Below the pieces are notes generated by a model that ran no database searches, was not told the origin of the DNA, and saw nothing but the letters and a program-made list of their open reading frames with translations. The translations under genes and the position numbers were made by a program. A stretch of DNA of 63,519 nucleotides, filler included, from Octopus bimaculoides (lineage: Eukaryota): assembly GCF_001194135.2 (NCBI RefSeq). It is 9 parts of 9 records of this genome, joined end to end, with 100 filler letters (N's around TTAATTAATTAA, not from the genome) between each part and the next. Parts side by side here need not be neighbours in the genome. Positions count along the whole stretch, not along the records: positions 42,414 to 44,092 come from NW_026363451.1; 8 more parts are not named here. One strand, given 5' to 3'. This document shows, one piece after another, positions 1 through 44,092 of this stretch. How positions within the stretch are numbered: position 1 is the first letter of the stretch; every line of letters begins with the position of its first letter.

Positions 1-39
<39 letters not shown>

Positions 40-216
40 CATACATACAGATACATATATATACATGTACACACACATATACATATACATATGCATAAAC
101 ACACACATACACACATACACACACATATGTATATGCATACATGCGTACATACATACGTACATACATACATACATACATACATACTTACATACATACATAC
201 ATACACACGCACATAT
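1..216. repeat. Compound (TA)n/(TACA)n microsatellite
   Basis: Direct inspection. Confidence 0.95.
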
Positions 217-2069
217 TCAGGTAAATAAGATTTTCCCATAACAAGTAGAAGTATAAAGGAAAGAAGTTGAAAAATGCACTTGAAGTGTTTAAGAAGATTT
301 ATTTACATTTATTTAACCAGTTTCACAATTTTCTGATTTTTTTTTTTAAGTAATGTGTGACAGAAAGACCTGGAACTATATTCGTCTCCATTCTGAGTTG
401 AAGCAATCGCGGCATAGCTCCCAGCTGTAAAAAGACTCATAAAAATGTCAGATTATTGCATCTGATTAGTTATTCAGTTTTAGAAGCTCGAACTTCTCTA
501 AATGGCTGTAAGAAAGTTGCCAAGAAGCAGCTAAATACTAGATACTGGTATGTTTGCAGTTTTCAGAATTGTGGCTCTTGTTTTGCGAGGAAGACAGCTA
601 TTGCTTGACAAGTCTTCAACAATTATATCTATATAACAATGGCCGTTATAAATGTTGACTGGTTGGTTGGCTAGTTTTTCCATTCACACTTTGCATCGTA
701 TAGAGAGAAGGCCGGAGAGAGGGAGAGTAACAGAGAAATACAGAGAGAGTTAAACAAAAGAGATACAGGGTGAGTGCTTGGTGGCATGCAATGAGTAAAA
801 AATACTACATACAGTGAGAAAGAAAAGCTCATAGGAGAAATTGAAAGGGGAGCAGAAAGAGGAGGGGAGAGGAAGTAAATGACAGTCTTTATAAAAGGAG
901 TTATATAAATGAGATCTAAGTTTTTCTGCGAGGAGAAAATGCTACAACGATTAGCAGATTTTCGTTCGAATCTGCCGGAACGTATGAAGAATGAATAAAT
1001 ACGCTATTGTTTTGTTTTATCTAATGTTTTTAAGGTAATAAATATCTTTCTTTTGAAAATTATTATTCATTTAATCACCTTGTATAAGCAGCAAGAAATT
1101 TGATAAAAGGTAAATTATAATTATTGTATCTATGCTATATTTTCGGATATTACCAAAGTCACACCTTTTTTACTGCATAGACACGAAAGTAAAAGAAATT
1201 AGGTCATCCTGTATTGATCTGGTAATAAGAACTGCCATCATTTCCCTAATGTCAAAGTGACCAAATTATGCCATTAGGGAGAAATCTGAGAGAAAGGAAC
1301 TCAGCTTATTTAATAAACGACTATGTCATGTAATGAATCCAACAAAGTCACTTTTTATGATAACTTACGTTCTGTTATGCTAAAAGTCACCTTAAAGGCT
1401 TTGTAACTTTAATGTCAGAATAGGTTCCGATTTTGATACTCGGTCTGGTGTGACTGGCATCCATAAACAGAATAAATATAAAGGTCTGCATCTGCTGTAT
1501 ATTTATAACATACGACTTCTCTATCACCAACGTACTATTCTACTAACAAAAGAATCACAAAGCAACTTTGATGCTTCCTCGGTCCAAAGATAAGTATTTA
1601 ATTGACTACATAATCACCAAAAGACGTGACAGAATGGATGTTCTTGTCATTCGTTCATTCTATGCTACCCATTTGCTATCAAACTCCTTGTTGTGCAGTA
1701 AAATATCTTTCAGAATTTCAAATAACGATATCAAAATATCAAAGCTTCTAGACGTATAAATGTCAAGTCAATCAATGTTGGAGAATTCACAGGTAAATTA
1801 GATGCAACTTTGTCGAATGTAAATATCAGACAATGTAGAGATTTGTTGGAGAGCTGTCTCAGACAAGCAACATATTTGGCTTTCTTTGCGATACTTGGTT
1901 TGGCTAACCGAGATGGGCTCGACTAGAACAATCTTGAAATAAAGTCTGTCTCACATTGCACTCTGAGCACAGTCGGTACATTGGATGTTTAGACGAGACA
2001 CTTAGCTTAAAACAAACAAGCAAATAAACAAACAAACAAACAAAAGCTGCTACAAGAAGTTACTATTAG

Positions 2070-2830
2070 TTGAAAGCAAACTGAAATGCATCAAAACAAT
2101 TTGGAATAGAGAAAAACTAATTAAAAAATCATACTAAAGGAACTGAAATAAGGAAACTAGACCAGAACCAGACATACAAATACTTAGAAACCAATGAACT
2201 ACATGGAGTACAAAACGCACAAATGAAAGTTAAAAAGAGAATATTATAGATGAACTAGGTTAATTTGTCAAAACAGAGCTAAAGGCAAACAAAAAAAAAA
2301 AAGATAATAGGCGTTAATAGTTTAGTTGTTCCTAGTTTATAATATTTTTCACATGAAACTAAATGAACTAGTAAGACTAGGCAAGAAAATAAGGAAAATA
2401 ATGACTGCATTTAGAATACACTACCCAAAATCTGACATAGAAAGATTATATATAGAACGAATTGAAGGAGGTAGAGGCCTTACACAACTAGAAAACTACT
2501 ATAAGATATCGAGCATAGGACTGCAGAATTATCTATTTCAGAATCAAGGAAAACTGATGCAAATAACTACAAAACATGAACAAAGCAAGAAACTGTTTTC
2601 TGTCTTCAAGAAAATTAAAAAATACAAAATAGGTCGGAATAACTTATTGATATGAAGAAAAATTTGGGCTACAAGATTCTATGATAAAGTAATGGCAAGA
2701 AAGGTCCCTACATGGATAATACAGGAATAAAATGAACAGAATTGAAATAGACAAAAATTAAGTTCTAACACTGGCTGAGAAGTGCGGGTATCAGTGCAGA
2801 GACTGAAGGGTTCGTAACCGCAGCGCCAGA
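2070..2830 (+). mobile_element. Degenerate R4/Dong-like non-LTR retrotransposon, RT C-terminal region
   Basis: ORF 2326-2655 contains HYPKSDIERLYIERIEGGRGL (family motif HPKSDVDRLYLPRKEGGRGL); downstream reads ETEGFVTAA; frameshifted. Confidence 0.8.
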
Positions 2831-2859
2831 AACCACTAAAAAATATGGTGTCATCTATT

Positions 2860-3150
2860 AAGACCGGTACATGAATTGCTTTTTCTCTTGGTGGTCCCTG
2901 ATAACAATTTCTGGTCGATTAGCTTTTATCTCCCTATCTGTGTGTATTGGCATATCCCAGAGTATAGTTGCGTTGTCATTTTCTGAGACCATTTTTTTTT
3001 AGTATGCCTATACCATTTCTTTCTTTTTACTGTTGACAATCTCCGGTGCGGGCACAACTTTTAGCACATATAATTCCAACTCTGTCATGTCTATTGATGT
3101 ATTCCTTTTTGGCCAAGACTGGACAGCCATAAACGATATTATTTATTTAT
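2860..3150 (-). mobile_element. R4-like LINE Zn-knuckle/REL endonuclease fragment, inverted relative to the adjacent fragment
   Basis: Minus-strand translation gives YGCPVLAKKEYINRHDRVG and SENDNATILWD..HTDREIKANRPEIVIRD. Confidence 0.7.
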
Positions 3151-3367
3151 TGTTTCTTTCCCACCGGATTTGCTAAAAGGCTGCTAGGCTAAATAATGTG
3201 CATCTGTCACTCTTACGGTCGCTTCGGGGTACGATTTCGTTTCGTCTTGTTCCGAAGTATATTGTATTTATTACACACTATATCTATTAAGTGATATTTT
3301 ACGAGCTGACCACTGTAGCCTCTGACTTTTCTACGGTTTATGTATGTTAAGTATGTCATCTAGATAA

Positions 3368-3423
<56 letters not shown>

Positions 3424-3439
3424 AATGATGATGATGATG

Positions 3440-3498
<59 letters not shown>
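3368..3498. repeat. (ATG)n(ATA)n microsatellite
   Basis: Direct inspection. Similar arrays occur at 4240-4356 and 5480-5582. Confidence 0.95.
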
Positions 3499-3499
<1 letters not shown>

Positions 3500-3700
3500 G
3501 TTTCAAATTTTTCCACAAGCAATTTTGGTGGAGGAGATGAGTCGATTACATGGACTCCAATATTCAATTGGTACTTATTTTATCGACCACGAAAGGATGA
3601 AAGCAAAGTCGACCTCGGCGAAATTTGAGCTCAAAAAATAAAGACCGACAAAAAAATGCTAAGCATTTCGTCCAGTTAAGCATTTTCAGCTTGCTGCCCT
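3500..3700 (-). mobile_element. Nin-domain-like tRNA SINE (family C) copy
   Basis: Reverse complement of the core GTCGACTTTGCTTTCATCCTTTCGTGGTCGATAAAATAAGTACCA. Other copies at about 10975-11185(+), 18260-18400(+), 21715-21835(+), 22220-22435(-), 23570-23795(+), 25510-25690(+), 29845-31000 (cluster), 55410-55505(-) and 55895-55980(-). The Nin-domain assignment is from recalled consensus. Confidence 0.8.
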
Positions 3701-3711
3701 GCAGTACCAGA

Positions 3712-4263
3712 CAGTGGCTCTCGTGGCTTCTGATCTTAACTCGCTGGAAGTGTTATCATTTACATTGTCTTGTCTTGGTATAAAAGATGAGCCACAACAA
3801 ATATTCTGCGCAATGCCACAGATTTGCTTGTCAGTTGTTTGATCTTAACCAATTGAGTATGTCACTTAGTAGCTGACGATATGTGCATCTCTGTTCACGA
3901 GCAGAAGTAGTGGGGAGCATCATAGCCATATGTTAAGAGGAATTCTCTGAAATTTGGATAATTCACCTTTGGAAACATGGGTGTTTCATTCAACCTCCTT
4001 AAACAACCCTTTTCCAGGGATCTTATGAGCGGGATGGGCTACTCGACATGAACAAAAATCCTAAAAGGGCCCTACCTGCAGGGTCATGCGCTGTTTATCT
4101 TGATATGCGATCACCATGTCGCGGACATATGGTTGTGATGCATGTGCCTGGTGTACCCTTATCAGACGGGTAGTCATGACGTGTATACTGGGCTTCGTAT
4201 ATTTTATCCCAGTATCACTTTGGACTGCTCTCTTACTCAATAATGATGATAATGATAATGATG

Positions 4264-42313: not shown

Positions 42314-42414
42314 NNNNNNNNNNNNNNNNNNNNNNNNNNNNNNNNNNNNNNNNNNNNTTAATTAATTAANNNNNNNNNNNNNNNNNNNNNNNNNNNNNNN
42401 NNNNNNNNNNNNNA

Positions 42415-43026
42415 AGCTACACAGAAATATCAGACATCAATTACGATCATCAACAACCTATCAAAAAACAAGACGGTACTACATCAATCAGCAGCGGGAA
42501 CATGGTAACAGCAAACAGAACACTGATAAACAAAGTGCTTTACACTTCNNNNNNNNNNNNNNNNNNNNNNNNNNNNNNNNNNNNNNNNNNNNNNNNNNNN
42601 NNNNNNNNNNNNNNNNNNNNNNNNNNNNNNNNNNNNNNNNNNNNNNNNNNNNNNNNNNNNNNNNNNNNNNNNNNNNNNNNNNNNNNNNNNNNNNNNNNNN
42701 NNNNNNNNNNNNNNNNNNNNNNNNNNNNNNNNNNNNNNNNNNNNNNNNNNNNNNNNNNNNNNNNNNNNNNNNNNNNNNNNNNNNNNNNNNNNNNNNNNNN
42801 NNNNNNNNNNNNNNNNNNNNNNNNNNNNNNNNNNNNNNNNNNNNNNNNNNNNNNNNNNNNNNNNNNNNNNNNNNNNNNNNNNNNNNNNNNNNNNNNNNNN
42901 NNNNNNNNNNNNNNNNNNNNNNNNNNNNNNNNNNNNNNNNNNNNNNNNNNNNNNNNNNNNNNNNNNNNNNNNNCCGACGGAAACAAAGTACTTAAACATC
43001 TGTCAGGGCACTTCGTTAATCGCTAA
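42415..43026 (+). CDS. Unassigned ORF upstream of the NS1-like gene (two pieces across an N gap), probably viral
   Basis: Stop-free SYTEISDINYDHQQPIKKQDGTTSISSGNMVTANRTLINKVLYT, then a gap, then DGNKVLKHLSGHFVNR*. It shares the A/C-rich composition of the NS1-like ORF. Confidence 0.4.
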   Translation, partial: SYTEISDINYDHQQPIKKQDGTTSISSGNMVTANRTLINKVLYTXXXXXXXXXXXXXXXXXXXXXXXXXXXXXXXXXXXXXXXXXXXXXXXXXXXXXXXXXXXXXXXXXXXXXXXXXXXXXXXXXXXXXXXXXXXXXXXXXXXXXXXXXXXXXXXXXXXXXXXXXXXXXXXXXXXXXXXXXXXXXXXDGNKVLKHLSGHFVNR

Positions 43027-43052
43027 TAACAGCGACAGCGTTTCGTAAACAC

Positions 43053-43104
43053 TGGGCGGGAAAAACCTCAATATATACAGCGACGATAACACGAATTAAA
43101 CAGT
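43053..43104 (+). promoter_or_regulatory. Putative viral promoter: GC box, TATATA and CAGT initiator
   Basis: GGGCGGG at about 43054-43060, TATATA at 43072-43077, CAGT at 43101-43104 (29 nt after the TATA start) and ATG at 43117. Confidence 0.4.
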
Positions 43105-43116
43105 CAGCCGACAGCG

Positions 43117-44092
43117 ATGGAGCCCGCAACAGACAGCACAATGTACGCTACTAAAGAAACATTCGACGCCTTCATAAAAACTTCTCAATTGTTACCGTAT
43201 ACTTGGGTATACAGATGGAACGAAGACAACGAGTTCACGTGGGACGAATCACCAACAATCGGCAAAGCGCTGGAAACTATACGTTACACACAATCACCGC
43301 AAGCGCAATATTTCATGAACATCATAACGAAACACCCTTCGATAGTCATTTATCACAAAGACGCCGCCAGTAAAATCAAACACTGCTACGATAAAAAACA
43401 TTTCCACGTGATTTCATTCCACAAAGACCATCCATCGAATCAACACAGTTTCCAAATGTTGAAAAACATTCTGAAGAACAATGTTGCCAAACCGTATAAC
43501 ATGTCCGCCATGAAAGTCTTCACACCCTTCGGGTTCTGTAAATACCTCACGCAGGACGAATCGATGAGATGGGTTGTCTGCGCCAACAACATCACCTCCA
43601 AACAACAGACAGCTCTACTAAAACAACTCACCGACAAGGAATACCACGACAGCGATACCGATTTATCGGACACCGAATCGGTGAATAAAACGAAGACTGT
43701 CAGAGGTGACAAATACGATTTCATAAAGAAAATGATGCGACAATGCAACAGCACAGACTTGGGAGANNNNNNNNNNNNNNNNNNNNNNNNNNNNNNNNNN
43801 NNNNNNNNNNNNNNNNNNNNNNNNNNNNNNNNNNNNNNNNNNNNNNNNNNNNNAAACGATCATATCGGCAGCAGCTACAGAAACTAACATAGAAACGCTT
43901 AGCACTCCCGTCTGGCAACAAATTAAGGATAAGAAAAATTTATTTATGAACAACATGAATAACTACCACGACATTCAAACATCGCTAGACATTTACGAGG
44001 AATGGCTGAAACACCACAACTTCGACCCGCGAACATTCGCGCAACAGACATTCGACATATGCCACAAGATAAACCCGAAAATAAACGGCCTA
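43117..44092 (+). CDS. Parvovirus-like NS1 (HUH endonuclease and start of the SF3 helicase region); endogenous viral element or co-assembled virus
   Basis: 216 stop-free codons containing HFHVI (HUH motif) and KYLTQD (catalytic Tyr region). After an internal gap another stop-free stretch, ...DIYEEWLKHHNFDPRTFAQQTFDICHKINPKINGL, resembles the segment just before Walker A of parvoviral NS1. Walker A itself falls in the next gap. Confidence 0.75.

What the first reader, a model, noticed from the sequence alone, without database searches (positions are those of the whole stretch)
43117..44092. Parvovirus-like NS1 with uninterrupted frames in a cephalopod-type scaffold
Seen: an abrupt switch to CpG-rich, A/C-skewed sequence; two stop-free coding stretches; HFHVI at about residue 96, KYLTQD about 45 residues later, and KINPKINGL just before a gap. 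Known: parvoviral NS1 has an N-terminal HUH nuclease followed by an SF3 helicase. Inference: a young or maintained endogenous parvoviral element, possibly from a mollusc-infecting lineage, lying in or upstream of NCS-1. Every other large element nearby is frameshifted except the Gypsy integrase. Caveat: both ends are assembly gaps, so no host junction is visible and Walker A is unsequenced.
Basis: partly seen in the sequence, partly recalled or inferred. Interest (0 to 1): 0.85.

Follow-up and report, generated by a model that had tools for sequence, protein, structure and literature searches.

The report
Parvovirus-like capsid–NS1 fragment, octopus-type lineage
The piece is a real fragment of a small parvovirus-like DNA virus: the end of its capsid gene, a promoter and the unbroken first half of its replication gene NS1. 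It belongs to an undescribed multi-copy lineage seen in octopus-type data, in which the capsid gene unusually lies before NS1.

Summary
ATG 43117 opens 216 stop-free codons into the gap. A second frame (43856-44092) gives 79 more and ends KINPKINGL. HFHVI is at residue 95 and KYLTQD at 142. CpG o/e is 1.37 and the strand is A/C-rich.

As written (87 N) the two frames are 1 nt out of phase. Two colinear relatives carry 83 nt there, which would put them in frame.

Relatives continue KINPKINGL directly into Walker A/B/C, pass Pfam Parvo_NS1, and match AAV Rep helicase. A model of the window's N-terminal domain (pLDDT 80) best matches Parvoviridae NS proteins.

It stops 90 nt before NS1, and a conserved GC-box/TATA/CAGT promoter lies between. 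This VP-then-NS1 order recurs in all six intact nearest ~3.5-4.7 kb metagenomic relatives. More distant relatives have NS1 first.

Sister copies are diverged (dS saturated, dN/dS about 0.1-0.2) and broken. One sits in an Octopus bimaculoides gene model.

This copy shows no break in what is sequenced, but no host junction, so "endogenous" is likely and unproven.

The parts
42414..42548 (+). Capsid (VP) gene fragment, open in the frame starting at 42415.
   Evidence: tblastn aligns window 42421-42546 to residues 440-492 of the intact 606-aa VP of L026 (41.5% identity). It is 72% identical in nucleotides to L003 1605-1736, upstream of that copy's NS1. 'MVTANRTLINKVLYT' matches 'MVTANRTLINEVLYT' in L003.
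42549..42973 (.). Assembly gap (425 N) inside the VP gene.
   Evidence: By comparison with L026 and L003, only about 280-290 nt are expected here. The written length is probably about 135-145 nt too long, or this copy carries an insertion.
42974..43026 (+). C-terminal end of VP (...KVLKHLSGHFVNR) with its stop codon at 43024-43026.
   Evidence: The ORF end is. The stop and the preceding codons align with L012, L013, L011 and L006. The same C-terminal motif is seen in the O. bimaculoides model P0032 and in the L006 VP.
43027..43116 (+). VP-NS1 intergenic region, read as the putative NS1 promoter. It holds GGGCGG at 43054-43059, TATATA at 43072-43077 and CAGT at 43101-43104 (30 nt after the TATA), and it ends directly before the ATG at 43117-43119.
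   Evidence: These blocks are conserved among copies whose synonymous sites are saturated (alignment A6; dS). Promoter function is inferred and was not tested.
43117..44092 (+). 5' part of the NS1 gene, given as one part. It contains 216 codons, then the assembly gap 43767-43853, then 79 codons. It is cut off by the piece's edge immediately before the expected Walker A.
   Evidence: There are no stops or frame changes in either sequenced fragment. Relatives P0006 and P0007 continue KINPKINGL into HITGVSNSGKS.
43117..43656 (+). HUH-type nuclease / origin-binding domain of NS1 (residues 1-180). H95-F-H97 is at 43399-43407 and Tyr143 at 43543-43545.
   Evidence: The motifs are conserved across family alignment A5, including exogenous-type NS1s. 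Y143 is at least 90% conserved. The AF2 model has pLDDT 80.2 and pTM 0.73. Foldseek BFVD top hits are Parvoviridae NS proteins (E 3.4e-5, TMq 0.43-0.48). The PDB top hit is the HUH initiator RepB (E 0.019, weak).
43767..43853 (.). Assembly gap (87 N) inside NS1.
   Evidence: L012 and L001 have 83 nt here. P0006 has 29 residues and P0004 has 30. The gap is in frame if its true length is 83, 86 or 89 nt.
43856..44092 (+). NS1 region leading into the SF3 helicase, ending at KINPKINGL.
   Evidence: It is 72% identical to P0006 over 79 codons and matches P0007 residues 229-306. It gets no Pfam hit of its own.

Best explanation
The piece is part of one copy of a small parvovirus-like ssDNA virus genome from an undescribed lineage.

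It carries the last part of the capsid (VP) gene, a 90-nt TATA/initiator promoter, and the first ~325 codons of NS1.

In the parent virus, NS1 would use the His-hydrophobic-His metal site and Tyr143 to nick the replication origin. The SF3 helicase that follows would then drive rolling-hairpin replication. That helicase is unsequenced in this copy.

The lineage is arranged capsid first, NS1 second, on one strand.

This copy is most likely a recently integrated germline copy (an endogenous parvoviral element) in a cephalopod-type genome. It is one member of a multi-copy family formed by many separate integrations.

Shown: NS1 identity, the VP-promoter-NS1 anatomy, family multiplicity, decay of sister copies, and purifying selection during divergence.

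Inferred: the catalytic mechanism, promoter activity, integration of this particular copy, and its youth.
For: NS1 identity:
- There are six relatives at 58-77% identity.
- P0006 and P0007 span the gap and carry Walker A, Walker B and motif C.
- Pfam PF01057 scores 38.5 and 44.9 bits against a cutoff of 20.
- A family profile hits the AAV Rep40/68 helicase at 5.5e-11.
- Of 1302 profile hits, the full-length ones are 515-730 aa NS1s on ~4 kb contigs. The only named ones are 'Parvoviridae sp.' NS proteins and a spider endogenous copy.
- The N-terminal model matches Parvoviridae NS proteins.

Capsid gene upstream:
- The window fragment aligns to the L026 VP.
- The PLA2 domain PF08398 is found in L003 (39.5 bits), L022 (30.1 bits) and L018 (53.7 bits).

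Promoter: the blocks are conserved between copies.

Family and integration:
- At least six diverged copies occur in the single run SRR11869391.
- Every sister copy that covers much of NS1 has 1-2 frame changes.
- A fragment lies inside O. bimaculoides model A0A0L8FJ23, next to an IS1595-type transposase domain.
- In L022 a 5'-truncated NS1 abuts 2.4 kb of non-viral DNA with a weak piggyBac-type hit.
- The same 370-aa product is seen in runs from at least five accession series.

Separate integrations: pS is 0.7-1.0 (saturated) while pN is 0.15-0.33.

Youth: there are no breaks in the 295 sequenced NS1 codons, and CpG o/e is 1.37 against 0.29-0.98 in sister copies.
Against: - The piece contains no host junction, terminal hairpin or Walker A.
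- Both outer ends and two internal stretches are gaps.
- An intact, CpG-rich copy is equally what an exogenous virus contig would look like.
- No near-identical copy was found in the protein collection (best 77%), so fixation or depth cannot be judged.
- The window's own fragments get no significant Pfam or PDB sequence hit.
- The PDB fold match is weak.
- The host species of the SRA runs is unknown to me.
Confidence: 0.7

Rival explanations
1. It is a contig set from an exogenous or episomal virus that was infecting the sequenced animal (or was present in its food or a contaminant), wrongly scaffolded into the host assembly.
For: - There are no stops or frameshifts in any sequenced part.
- CpG o/e is 1.37, higher than in every sister copy.
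- No host junction is present in the piece.
- The promoter elements are intact.
- Hairpin-ended relatives of exogenous type exist (L021).
Against: - The element is broken into 135-, 793- and 239-nt contigs with internal gaps. That pattern is typical of a collapsed multi-copy repeat (inference).
- All sister copies examined are decayed or host-embedded.
- A scaffolder linked the piece to something on both sides.
Confidence: 0.25
2. It is a co-opted host gene: an old integrated NS1 kept open by selection for a host function such as antiviral interference.
For: - The frame is open across 295 codons.
- dN/dS is far below 1 against relatives.
- The upstream promoter is conserved.
Against: - The low dN/dS is measured between copies with saturated dS, so it reflects evolution as a virus and not on this branch.
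- The high CpG argues against long residence.
- The adjacent capsid gene and the viral promoter are retained as in the virus.
- No ortholog was found.
Confidence: 0.04
3. It is a non-parvoviral HUH element (Helitron, a CRESS-DNA virus Rep, a plasmid-type Rep or a bidnavirus-like element) that only resembles NS1.
For: - The window's own weak hits are to plasmid Rep: Rep_OBD at E 0.56 and RepB at E 3.9.
- The PDB fold top hit is RepB.
Against: - Relatives pass Parvo_NS1 and match AAV Rep.
- The BFVD fold hits are Parvoviridae NS proteins ahead of CRESS or microvirus Reps.
- The adjacent gene is a PLA2-bearing capsid related to IHHNV-type capsids.
- One relative is a ~4 kb genome with hairpins at both contig ends.
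Confidence: 0.01

Closest known systems
Endogenous parvoviral elements of invertebrates (for example the chapparvovirus-derived elements of arachnids and insects in PMC6631224, and IHHNV-derived elements in Penaeus monodon in PMC11357303)
   Same: - Parvovirus rep/cap sequence sits in animal genome data.
- There are several independently acquired copies per species, with stops and frameshifts in most copies and occasional unbroken ORFs.
- A spider entry (Araneus ventricosus GBO16608.1) is among the profile hits.
   Different: - The host group is cephalopod-type. No cephalopod parvovirus or endogenous copy turned up in ten literature searches.
- The capsid gene lies upstream of NS1.
- The capsid carries a PLA2 domain, which the shrimp hamaparvoviruses lack according to PMC11357303.
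- This copy has no visible host junction.
Unclassified 'Parvoviridae sp.' from bird cloacal viromes (Turdus hortulorum QTE03882.1, Turdus pallidus QTE03754.1) and unnamed ~3.5-4.7 kb metagenomic contigs (L017, L018, L019, L021, L038, L039)
   Same: - They are the nearest full-length NS1s (E 1e-29 to 1e-37 against the family profile).
- The HUH and Tyr motifs align.
- The six contigs are all VP-then-NS1 on one strand.
- In a rough NJ tree of the SF3 domain they cluster next to the cephalopod family.
   Different: - Identity to the window's N-terminal domain is only about 25%.
- They carry a small extra ORF between or overlapping VP and NS1, which the window lacks.
- They look exogenous. L021 has hairpins at both ends.
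- I could not check the gene order of the two GenBank bird-virome genomes.
AAV Rep68/Rep40 and other Parvovirinae NS1/Rep proteins
   Same: The architecture is the same, an HUH nuclease followed by an SF3 helicase. The family profile matches the Rep helicase from the Walker A lead-in through motif C (5.5e-11).
   Different: - There is no detectable sequence similarity in the nuclease domain.
- Gene order is rep-then-cap in AAV and cap-then-rep here.
- In this lineage the Lys that follows the catalytic Tyr in relatives (YLTK in P0188, YLVK in P0215) is Gln (YLTQ).
Chaphama-/ichthamaparvovirus NS1 (Hamavirinae)
   Same: They are among the best named structural matches to the window's N-terminal model (Phylloscopus proregulus Ichthamaparvovirus, Cygnus atratus Chaphamaparvovirus, Tasmanian devil-associated chapparvovirus 1). 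Genome size is also about 4 kb.
   Different: - The standard NS-first ~4 kb contigs recovered here (L034-L037, L044, L045) are much more distant (46-60 bits against 98-119 bits versus P0007) and form a separate cluster.
- According to PMC13426907, PLA2 is confined to Parvovirinae and Densovirinae, apart from one horizontal transfer into Penbrevirinae.

Membership tests
Parvoviridae NS1 (HUH nuclease + SF3 helicase) | An HUH motif in the N-terminal domain. | tested here: met
   H95-F-H97 followed by V-I-S. The column is conserved in the cephalopod-type family and aligns with HFH/HGH/HYH/HWH in the exogenous-type NS1s P0101, P0137, P0188, P0215, P0150 and P0157.
Parvoviridae NS1 (HUH nuclease + SF3 helicase) | A catalytic tyrosine motif about 45-50 residues after the HUH motif. 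| tested here: met
   Tyr143 is at least 90% conserved. It aligns with the Tyr of YLTK/YLVK/YLKC in P0188, P0215 and P0137. The following Lys is Gln in this lineage. P0101 and P0157 show His at the aligned column, which may be a misalignment.
Parvoviridae NS1 (HUH nuclease + SF3 helicase) | The N-terminal domain has the NS1/Rep nuclease fold. | tested here: met
   The AF2 model has pLDDT 80.2. The BFVD top hits are Parvoviridae NS proteins (E 3.4e-5 to 3e-4, probability 1.00, TMq 0.43-0.48). Support from solved structures is weak (RepB, E 0.019, TM about 0.3), so the overall strength is moderate.
Parvoviridae NS1 (HUH nuclease + SF3 helicase) | SF3 helicase motifs (Walker A, B, B', C) in the same protein. 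| not testable with these tools
   The piece ends at KINPKINGL, just before Walker A. In relatives the same peptide runs straight into GVSNSGKS, then TDEMW and STSN. For this copy the motifs are inferred.
Parvoviridae NS1 (HUH nuclease + SF3 helicase) | A Pfam PF01057 (Parvo_NS1) match above the gathering score. | tested here: not met
   The window's two fragments give no PF01057 hit, because the modelled helicase core is not sequenced. Relatives P0006 (38.5 bits) and P0007 (44.9 bits) pass the 20-bit cutoff.
Parvoviridae (canonical genome organisation) | The NS gene lies 5' of VP on the coding strand, or NS and VP lie on opposite strands (stated for all parvoviruses in PMC11357303). | tested here: not met
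   VP ends at 43026, 90 nt upstream of the NS1 ATG, on the same strand. The same adjacency is seen in L001, L003, L006, L011, L012 and L026 and in the exogenous-type L017, L018, L019, L021, L038 and L039.
Parvoviridae (canonical genome organisation) | A linear genome with terminal hairpins. | not testable with these tools
   None is present in the piece. Relative L021 has a 90-nt hairpin near its left end (z -5.6) and a perfect 143-nt hairpin at its right end (z -22.3). An assembler fold-back artefact is not excluded.
Parvoviridae (canonical genome organisation) | A capsid protein of parvoviral type (VP1 PLA2 and/or a parvoviral capsid family). | tested here: met
   This was met in relatives of the same family: PF08398 in L003 and L022 above the cutoff, weakly in L026, and IHHNV_capsid at E about 1e-5 in L017 and L019. 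The window holds only the C-terminal VP fragments, which align to the L026 VP.
Endogenous parvoviral element (germline-integrated) | Viral sequence flanked by host DNA. | tested here: not met
   The piece is bounded by N on both sides and contains no host DNA. Sister copies do show host context: L022 has 2.4 kb of non-viral DNA with a weak DDE_Tnp_1_7 hit, and P0032 is an O. bimaculoides model fused to an IS1595-type transposase domain.
Endogenous parvoviral element (germline-integrated) | Germline decay (stops, frameshifts, CpG loss). | tested here: not met
   The window has 0 stops and 0 frame changes in the 295 sequenced NS1 codons, and CpG o/e is 1.37. Sister copies show 1-2 frame changes in NS1 in L001, L006, L011 and L012. 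L003 has 4 frame changes and 2 stops in VP. L026 and L022 each have 1 stop in NS1, and L022 has 1 frame change in VP. Their CpG o/e is 0.29-0.98.
Endogenous parvoviral element (germline-integrated) | The same locus is present in different individuals at host copy number. | not testable with these tools
   No reads or population data were available for this copy. For sister loci, identical contigs or products recur in several runs, but I do not know whether those runs are different animals.
Established Parvoviridae subfamilies (Parvovirinae, Densovirinae, Hamavirinae, Metallovirinae, Hepanvirinae, Penbrevirinae; PMC13426907) | NS1 homology beyond the conserved domains, and phylogenetic placement with reference members. 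| not tested
   No ICTV reference sequences were available from the tools. The rough NJ tree used only unnamed contigs and three named unclassified entries.

The most novel reading that the evidence does not exclude
The piece samples a still-circulating, or very recently circulating, cephalopod parvovirus. It would belong to a deep, undescribed clade of Parvoviridae whose ~4 kb genomes carry the capsid gene before NS1 on the same strand, with NS1 driven by its own promoter between the two genes. That is a gene order not listed for any recognised parvovirus subfamily. The lineage would have integrated repeatedly into octopus-type genomes.
Probability: 0.35. Interest if true: 0.75.

Novelty: new variant of a known kind. 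Interest (0 to 1): 0.6.

Why it matters
Endogenous parvoviral elements are well known. In the literature I could search, none was reported from cephalopods, and no cephalopod parvovirus was described.

A multi-copy family with one apparently undecayed copy would give a first handle on DNA viruses of cephalopods and on how recently they entered the germline.

The family and its nearest metagenomic relatives also share a capsid-first gene order. This conflicts with the textbook statement that NS genes occupy the left side of all parvovirus genomes. If confirmed with reference phylogenies and genome termini, it would define a distinct clade with a different transcription layout, and it would affect how virome pipelines annotate such contigs.

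Tried and rejected
Dead ends:
- Pfam and PDB sequence searches with the window's own two fragments gave nothing significant. There were only weak plasmid-Rep hints.
- The word-indexed homologue search with the 79-aa fragment found no candidates.
- The first AF2 run with a shallow alignment was unusable (pLDDT 36.7). A deeper alignment fixed this.
- A PDB profile search with the N-terminal domain alignment gave no Rep/NS1 hit.
- The search for related loci failed with alignment A3 and found nothing for P0101 in viral contigs.
- Searching papers for the SRA run numbers gave nothing, so the host of the Logan runs remains unidentified.

Ideas considered and rejected:
- VP-before-NS1 as an artefact of a circular permutation or an assembler join through terminal repeats. 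I rejected this because the VP-NS1 spacer is only 18-145 nt in the copies where I measured it directly, and in the window it carries a conserved promoter. L017 and L018 have no terminal direct repeats. Six independent contigs break in the same NS1-to-VP interval. L021 ends in hairpins.
- Two NS1-then-VP junctions as the native order. L040 is a rearranged join of a truncated NS1 to mid-VP. L022 follows a 5'-truncated NS1. I read both as head-to-tail joins.
- Helitron, CRESS or plasmid Rep identity (see the rival explanations).

The fragments were always searched separately.
Full report
**1. What is in the piece**

Only three stretches are real DNA: 42414-42548, 42974-43766 and 43854-44092. Gaps of 425 N and 87 N separate them.

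- An ATG at 43117 opens 216 stop-free codons plus two bases that run into the 87-N gap.
- After the gap, the frame from 43856 is open for 79 codons to the edge of the piece and ends KINPKINGL.
- HFHVI begins at residue 95 and KYLTQD at residue 142.
- Composition is A 38.6%, C 24.9%, G 17.3%, T 19.2%, with CpG observed/expected 1.37.
- The long open frame is not chance. It spans 225 stop-free codons, while the maximum in 2000 shuffles was 192.
- The 79-codon stretch alone would not be significant (128/2000).

The "abrupt switch" cannot be tested, because the piece has no flank.

**2. The gap inside the finding**

With 87 N as written, the second frame is one base out of phase, and the ORF finder runs into a stop at 43885-43887. 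The gap length is only an estimate.

- Two independent relatives, L012 and L001, are colinear with both flanks and have 83 nt where the window has 87 N.
- Protein P0006 reads straight through that stretch with 29 residues, and P0004 with 30.
- A true length of 83, 86 or 89 nt puts the two window frames in phase.
- The "ga" left before the gap fits the Asp that relatives have there.

Continuity is well supported. The phase is consistent with an intact gene but unproven.

**3. Identity of the protein**

The window's own fragments give no significant Pfam or PDB sequence hit. The 216-aa fragment does find six proteins at 58-77% identity, all from Logan assemblies of runs SRR11869384-94.

- P0006 spans the gap and continues KINPKINGL-HITGVSNSGKS (Walker A).
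- P0007 (406 aa) carries the HUH region, Walker A, TDEMW-type Walker B and STSN motif C in one frame.
- Both pass Pfam Parvo_NS1: 38.5 and 44.9 bits against a cutoff of 20.
- A profile of the family hits the AAV Rep40/Rep68 helicase at E 5.5e-11 and another parvoviral NS1 at 9e-5.
- A profile search of 1.84 billion representatives gave 1302 hits. The full-length ones are 515-730-aa proteins on ~4 kb contigs.
- The few named hits are "Parvoviridae sp." non-structural proteins from bird viromes and a spider genomic entry.

**4. The N-terminal domain**

In an alignment with exogenous-type NS1s, the window's H95-F-H97 sits in the HUH column. Tyr143 sits in the column of the Tyr in YLTK (P0188) and YLVK (P0215). 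In this lineage the Lys is Gln.

- A first AlphaFold run with a shallow alignment failed.
- With the deeper alignment the model reached pLDDT 80.2 and pTM 0.73.
- Against predicted viral structures, the best matches are Parvoviridae non-structural proteins (E 3.4e-5 to 3e-4, TM 0.43-0.48). These include ichthama- and chaphamaparvovirus entries, which rank ahead of CRESS and microvirus initiators.
- Against solved structures, the top hit is the HUH initiator RepB, but only weakly (E 0.019).

I take the HUH-nuclease reading as supported at moderate strength.

**5.

Capsid gene:
- Fragment 42414-42548 aligns to residues 440-492 of an intact 606-aa capsid ORF in relative L026, and to the region upstream of NS1 in L003.
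- The same frame ends at 43024-43026 with ...KVLKHLSGHFVNR. This C-terminus is conserved in L006 and in the Octopus bimaculoides model P0032.
- The capsid identity is firm. The parvoviral PLA2 domain (PF08398) scores above cutoff in L003, L022 and L018.
- The capsids of L017 and L019 hit IHHNV_capsid at about 1e-5, and the L021 capsid matches that of L018 at 2.5e-31.

Promoter:
- The 90 nt between the VP stop and the NS1 ATG hold GGGCGG (43054-43059), TATATA (43072-43077) and CAGT 30 nt later (43101-43104). The spacer runs up to the ATG at 43117.
- These blocks are conserved among copies whose synonymous sites are saturated.
- I read this as the NS1 promoter. That reading is an inference.

**6. 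Gene order**

VP lies directly upstream of NS1 on the same strand in the window and in six diverged sister copies (L001, L003, L006, L011, L012, L026). The same order holds in all six intact nearest exogenous-type contigs from four different sources (L017, L018, L019, L021, L038, L039).

- The spacers I measured directly are 18-145 nt. In L021 the two genes overlap by four bases, and some relatives carry a small ORF in between.
- L021 (4083 bp) has a hairpin near its left end (z -5.6) and a perfect 143-nt hairpin at its right end (z -22.3). L017 and L018 show no terminal direct repeats.
- More distant ~4 kb relatives (L034-L037, L044, L045) have the usual NS1-then-VP order. They score 46-60 bits against P0007, while the VP-first set scores 98-119 bits.
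- In a rough NJ tree of the SF3 domain, the cephalopod-type family is monophyletic (100/100). It sits next to the VP-first contigs and the two bird-virome entries, away from the NS-first cluster.
- Two NS1-then-VP junctions exist. L040 is a join of a truncated NS1 to mid-VP. L022 follows a 5'-truncated NS1. I read both as head-to-tail joins and not as the native order.
- A 2024 review states that all parvoviruses carry NS on the left side (PMC11357303). I found no description of a capsid-first parvovirus.
- A circular genome with a hard-to-assemble intergenic region is not fully excluded.

**7. Endogenous or exogenous**

The family is clearly present in host genomes:
- At least six diverged copies occur in one run (SRR11869391).
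- Identical contigs are seen in up to four runs.
- Thirty-two 90%-identity clusters matched P0006.
- A fragment is embedded in the O. bimaculoides model A0A0L8FJ23, next to an IS1595-type transposase domain.
- L022 has 2.4 kb of non-viral DNA with a weak piggyBac-type hit next to a truncated NS1.
- One 370-aa product recurs in at least five run series.

| Locus | Gene | Frame changes | Stops | Other |
|---|---|---|---|---|
| L001 | NS1 | 2 | 0 | |
| L011 | NS1 | 2 | 0 | |
| L006 | NS1 | 1 | 0 | |
| L012 | NS1 | 1 | 0 | |
| L003 | VP | 4 | 2 | |
| L022 | NS1 | 0 | 1 | 5'-truncated |
| L022 | VP | 1 | 0 | |
| L026 | NS1 | 0 | 1 | |
| L026 | VP | 0 | 0 | intact over 606 codons |

Between copies, pS is 0.7-1.0 (saturated) and pN is 0.15-0.33. 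The copies therefore diverged under purifying selection as replicating viruses and entered the genome separately.

The window copy stands out. It has no break in the 295 sequenced NS1 codons or in the VP fragments. Its CpG o/e is 1.37, while the sister copies range from 0.29 to 0.98. That fits a very recent integration, and it fits a virus contig equally well.

The piece contains no host junction. Its fragmentation into tiny contigs fits a collapsed repeat, but this is only an inference. My estimates are about 0.6-0.7 for a young endogenous copy, about 0.25 for an exogenous or episomal virus, and the small remainder for co-option or a non-parvoviral element.

**8. Comparison with what is known, and novelty**

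In kind, this is an endogenous or exogenous parvoviral element, which is a known class.

- It meets the NS1 features that could be tested: HUH, Tyr and the fold.
- The helicase could not be tested in this copy.
- It fails the canonical gene-order feature.
- Subfamily placement was not tested, because no reference sequences were available from the tools.
- No cephalopod parvovirus or endogenous parvoviral element turned up in the papers I could search. That library is incomplete.

I rate it a new variant of a known kind. The lineage is undescribed, the host group is new, and the layout is capsid-first, shared with unnamed metagenomic genomes that are already public.

**9. Limits**

- The host species of the window and of the SRA runs is not established.
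- The tree is a quick NJ estimate without reference taxa.
- The hairpins of L021 could in principle be assembler fold-backs.
- The promoter and the catalytic mechanism are inferred from sequence.

Noticed in passing
L021 (JGI 3300013843, Ga0181310_1099503) 1-4083: This looks like a complete ~4.1 kb parvovirus-like genome. It has a hairpin at 38-127, a 78-aa ORF, a 483-aa capsid, a 564-aa NS1, and a perfect 143-nt terminal hairpin at 3941-4083. The capsid comes first and overlaps NS1 by 4 nt.
   Followed up: partly
L040 (JACSEB010000851.1) 1-2597: This is a rearranged relative of L039. NS1, truncated near its C-terminus, is fused in frame to the middle of the capsid gene, followed by the small ORF. 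It looks like a head-to-tail join with a deletion, either a defective genome or an assembly chimera.
   Followed up: partly
L022 3602-3763: About four to six direct repeats of a ~23-nt unit, each with a TATA-like core, lie between a 5'-truncated NS1 and the start of the PLA2 capsid gene. They could be a capsid promoter or NS1-binding iterons. The function is unknown.
   Followed up: no
P0032 (UniRef A0A0L8FJ23, Octopus bimaculoides): This predicted host protein is a chimera. It joins an IS1595/ISXO2-type transposase domain, the capsid C-terminus and a mid-NS1 fragment of this virus family. It is probably a gene-model artefact over a decayed insertion.
   Followed up: partly
L026 (ERR12921337) 1-4078: This is a near-complete sister element, with an intact 606-codon PLA2 capsid ORF and an NS1 that has a single stop. 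Its 370-aa NS1 product is found unchanged in runs from at least five accession series, which suggests a fixed locus or a transcript in a much-sequenced species.
   Followed up: partly
window 42549-42973: The 425-N gap appears about 135-145 nt longer than the homologous stretch in L026 and L003. Either the gap size is overestimated or this copy has an insertion in the capsid C-terminal region.
   Followed up: partly
L001-L016 compared with window 42414-44092: CpG observed/expected forms a gradient among copies: L005 0.29, L011 0.69, L003 0.78, the others 0.9-0.98, and the window 1.37. It may rank the copies by age, or by methylation exposure, in the genome.
   Followed up: no
P0101 and P0157 (alignment A5, columns about 225-235): Two exogenous-type NS1s show His where the others have the putative catalytic Tyr (…RHICTQPR, …KHILKHPR). 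This is either a local misalignment or a real active-site difference.
   Followed up: no
L017 1744-2247, L019 1871-2497, L039 1569-2204, L040 2110-2595: A 160-210-aa ORF with no Pfam match lies between the capsid and NS1, or overlaps the NS1 start, in several capsid-first relatives. It is conserved between L039/L040 and L019, and it is absent from the window's 90-nt spacer.
   Followed up: partly
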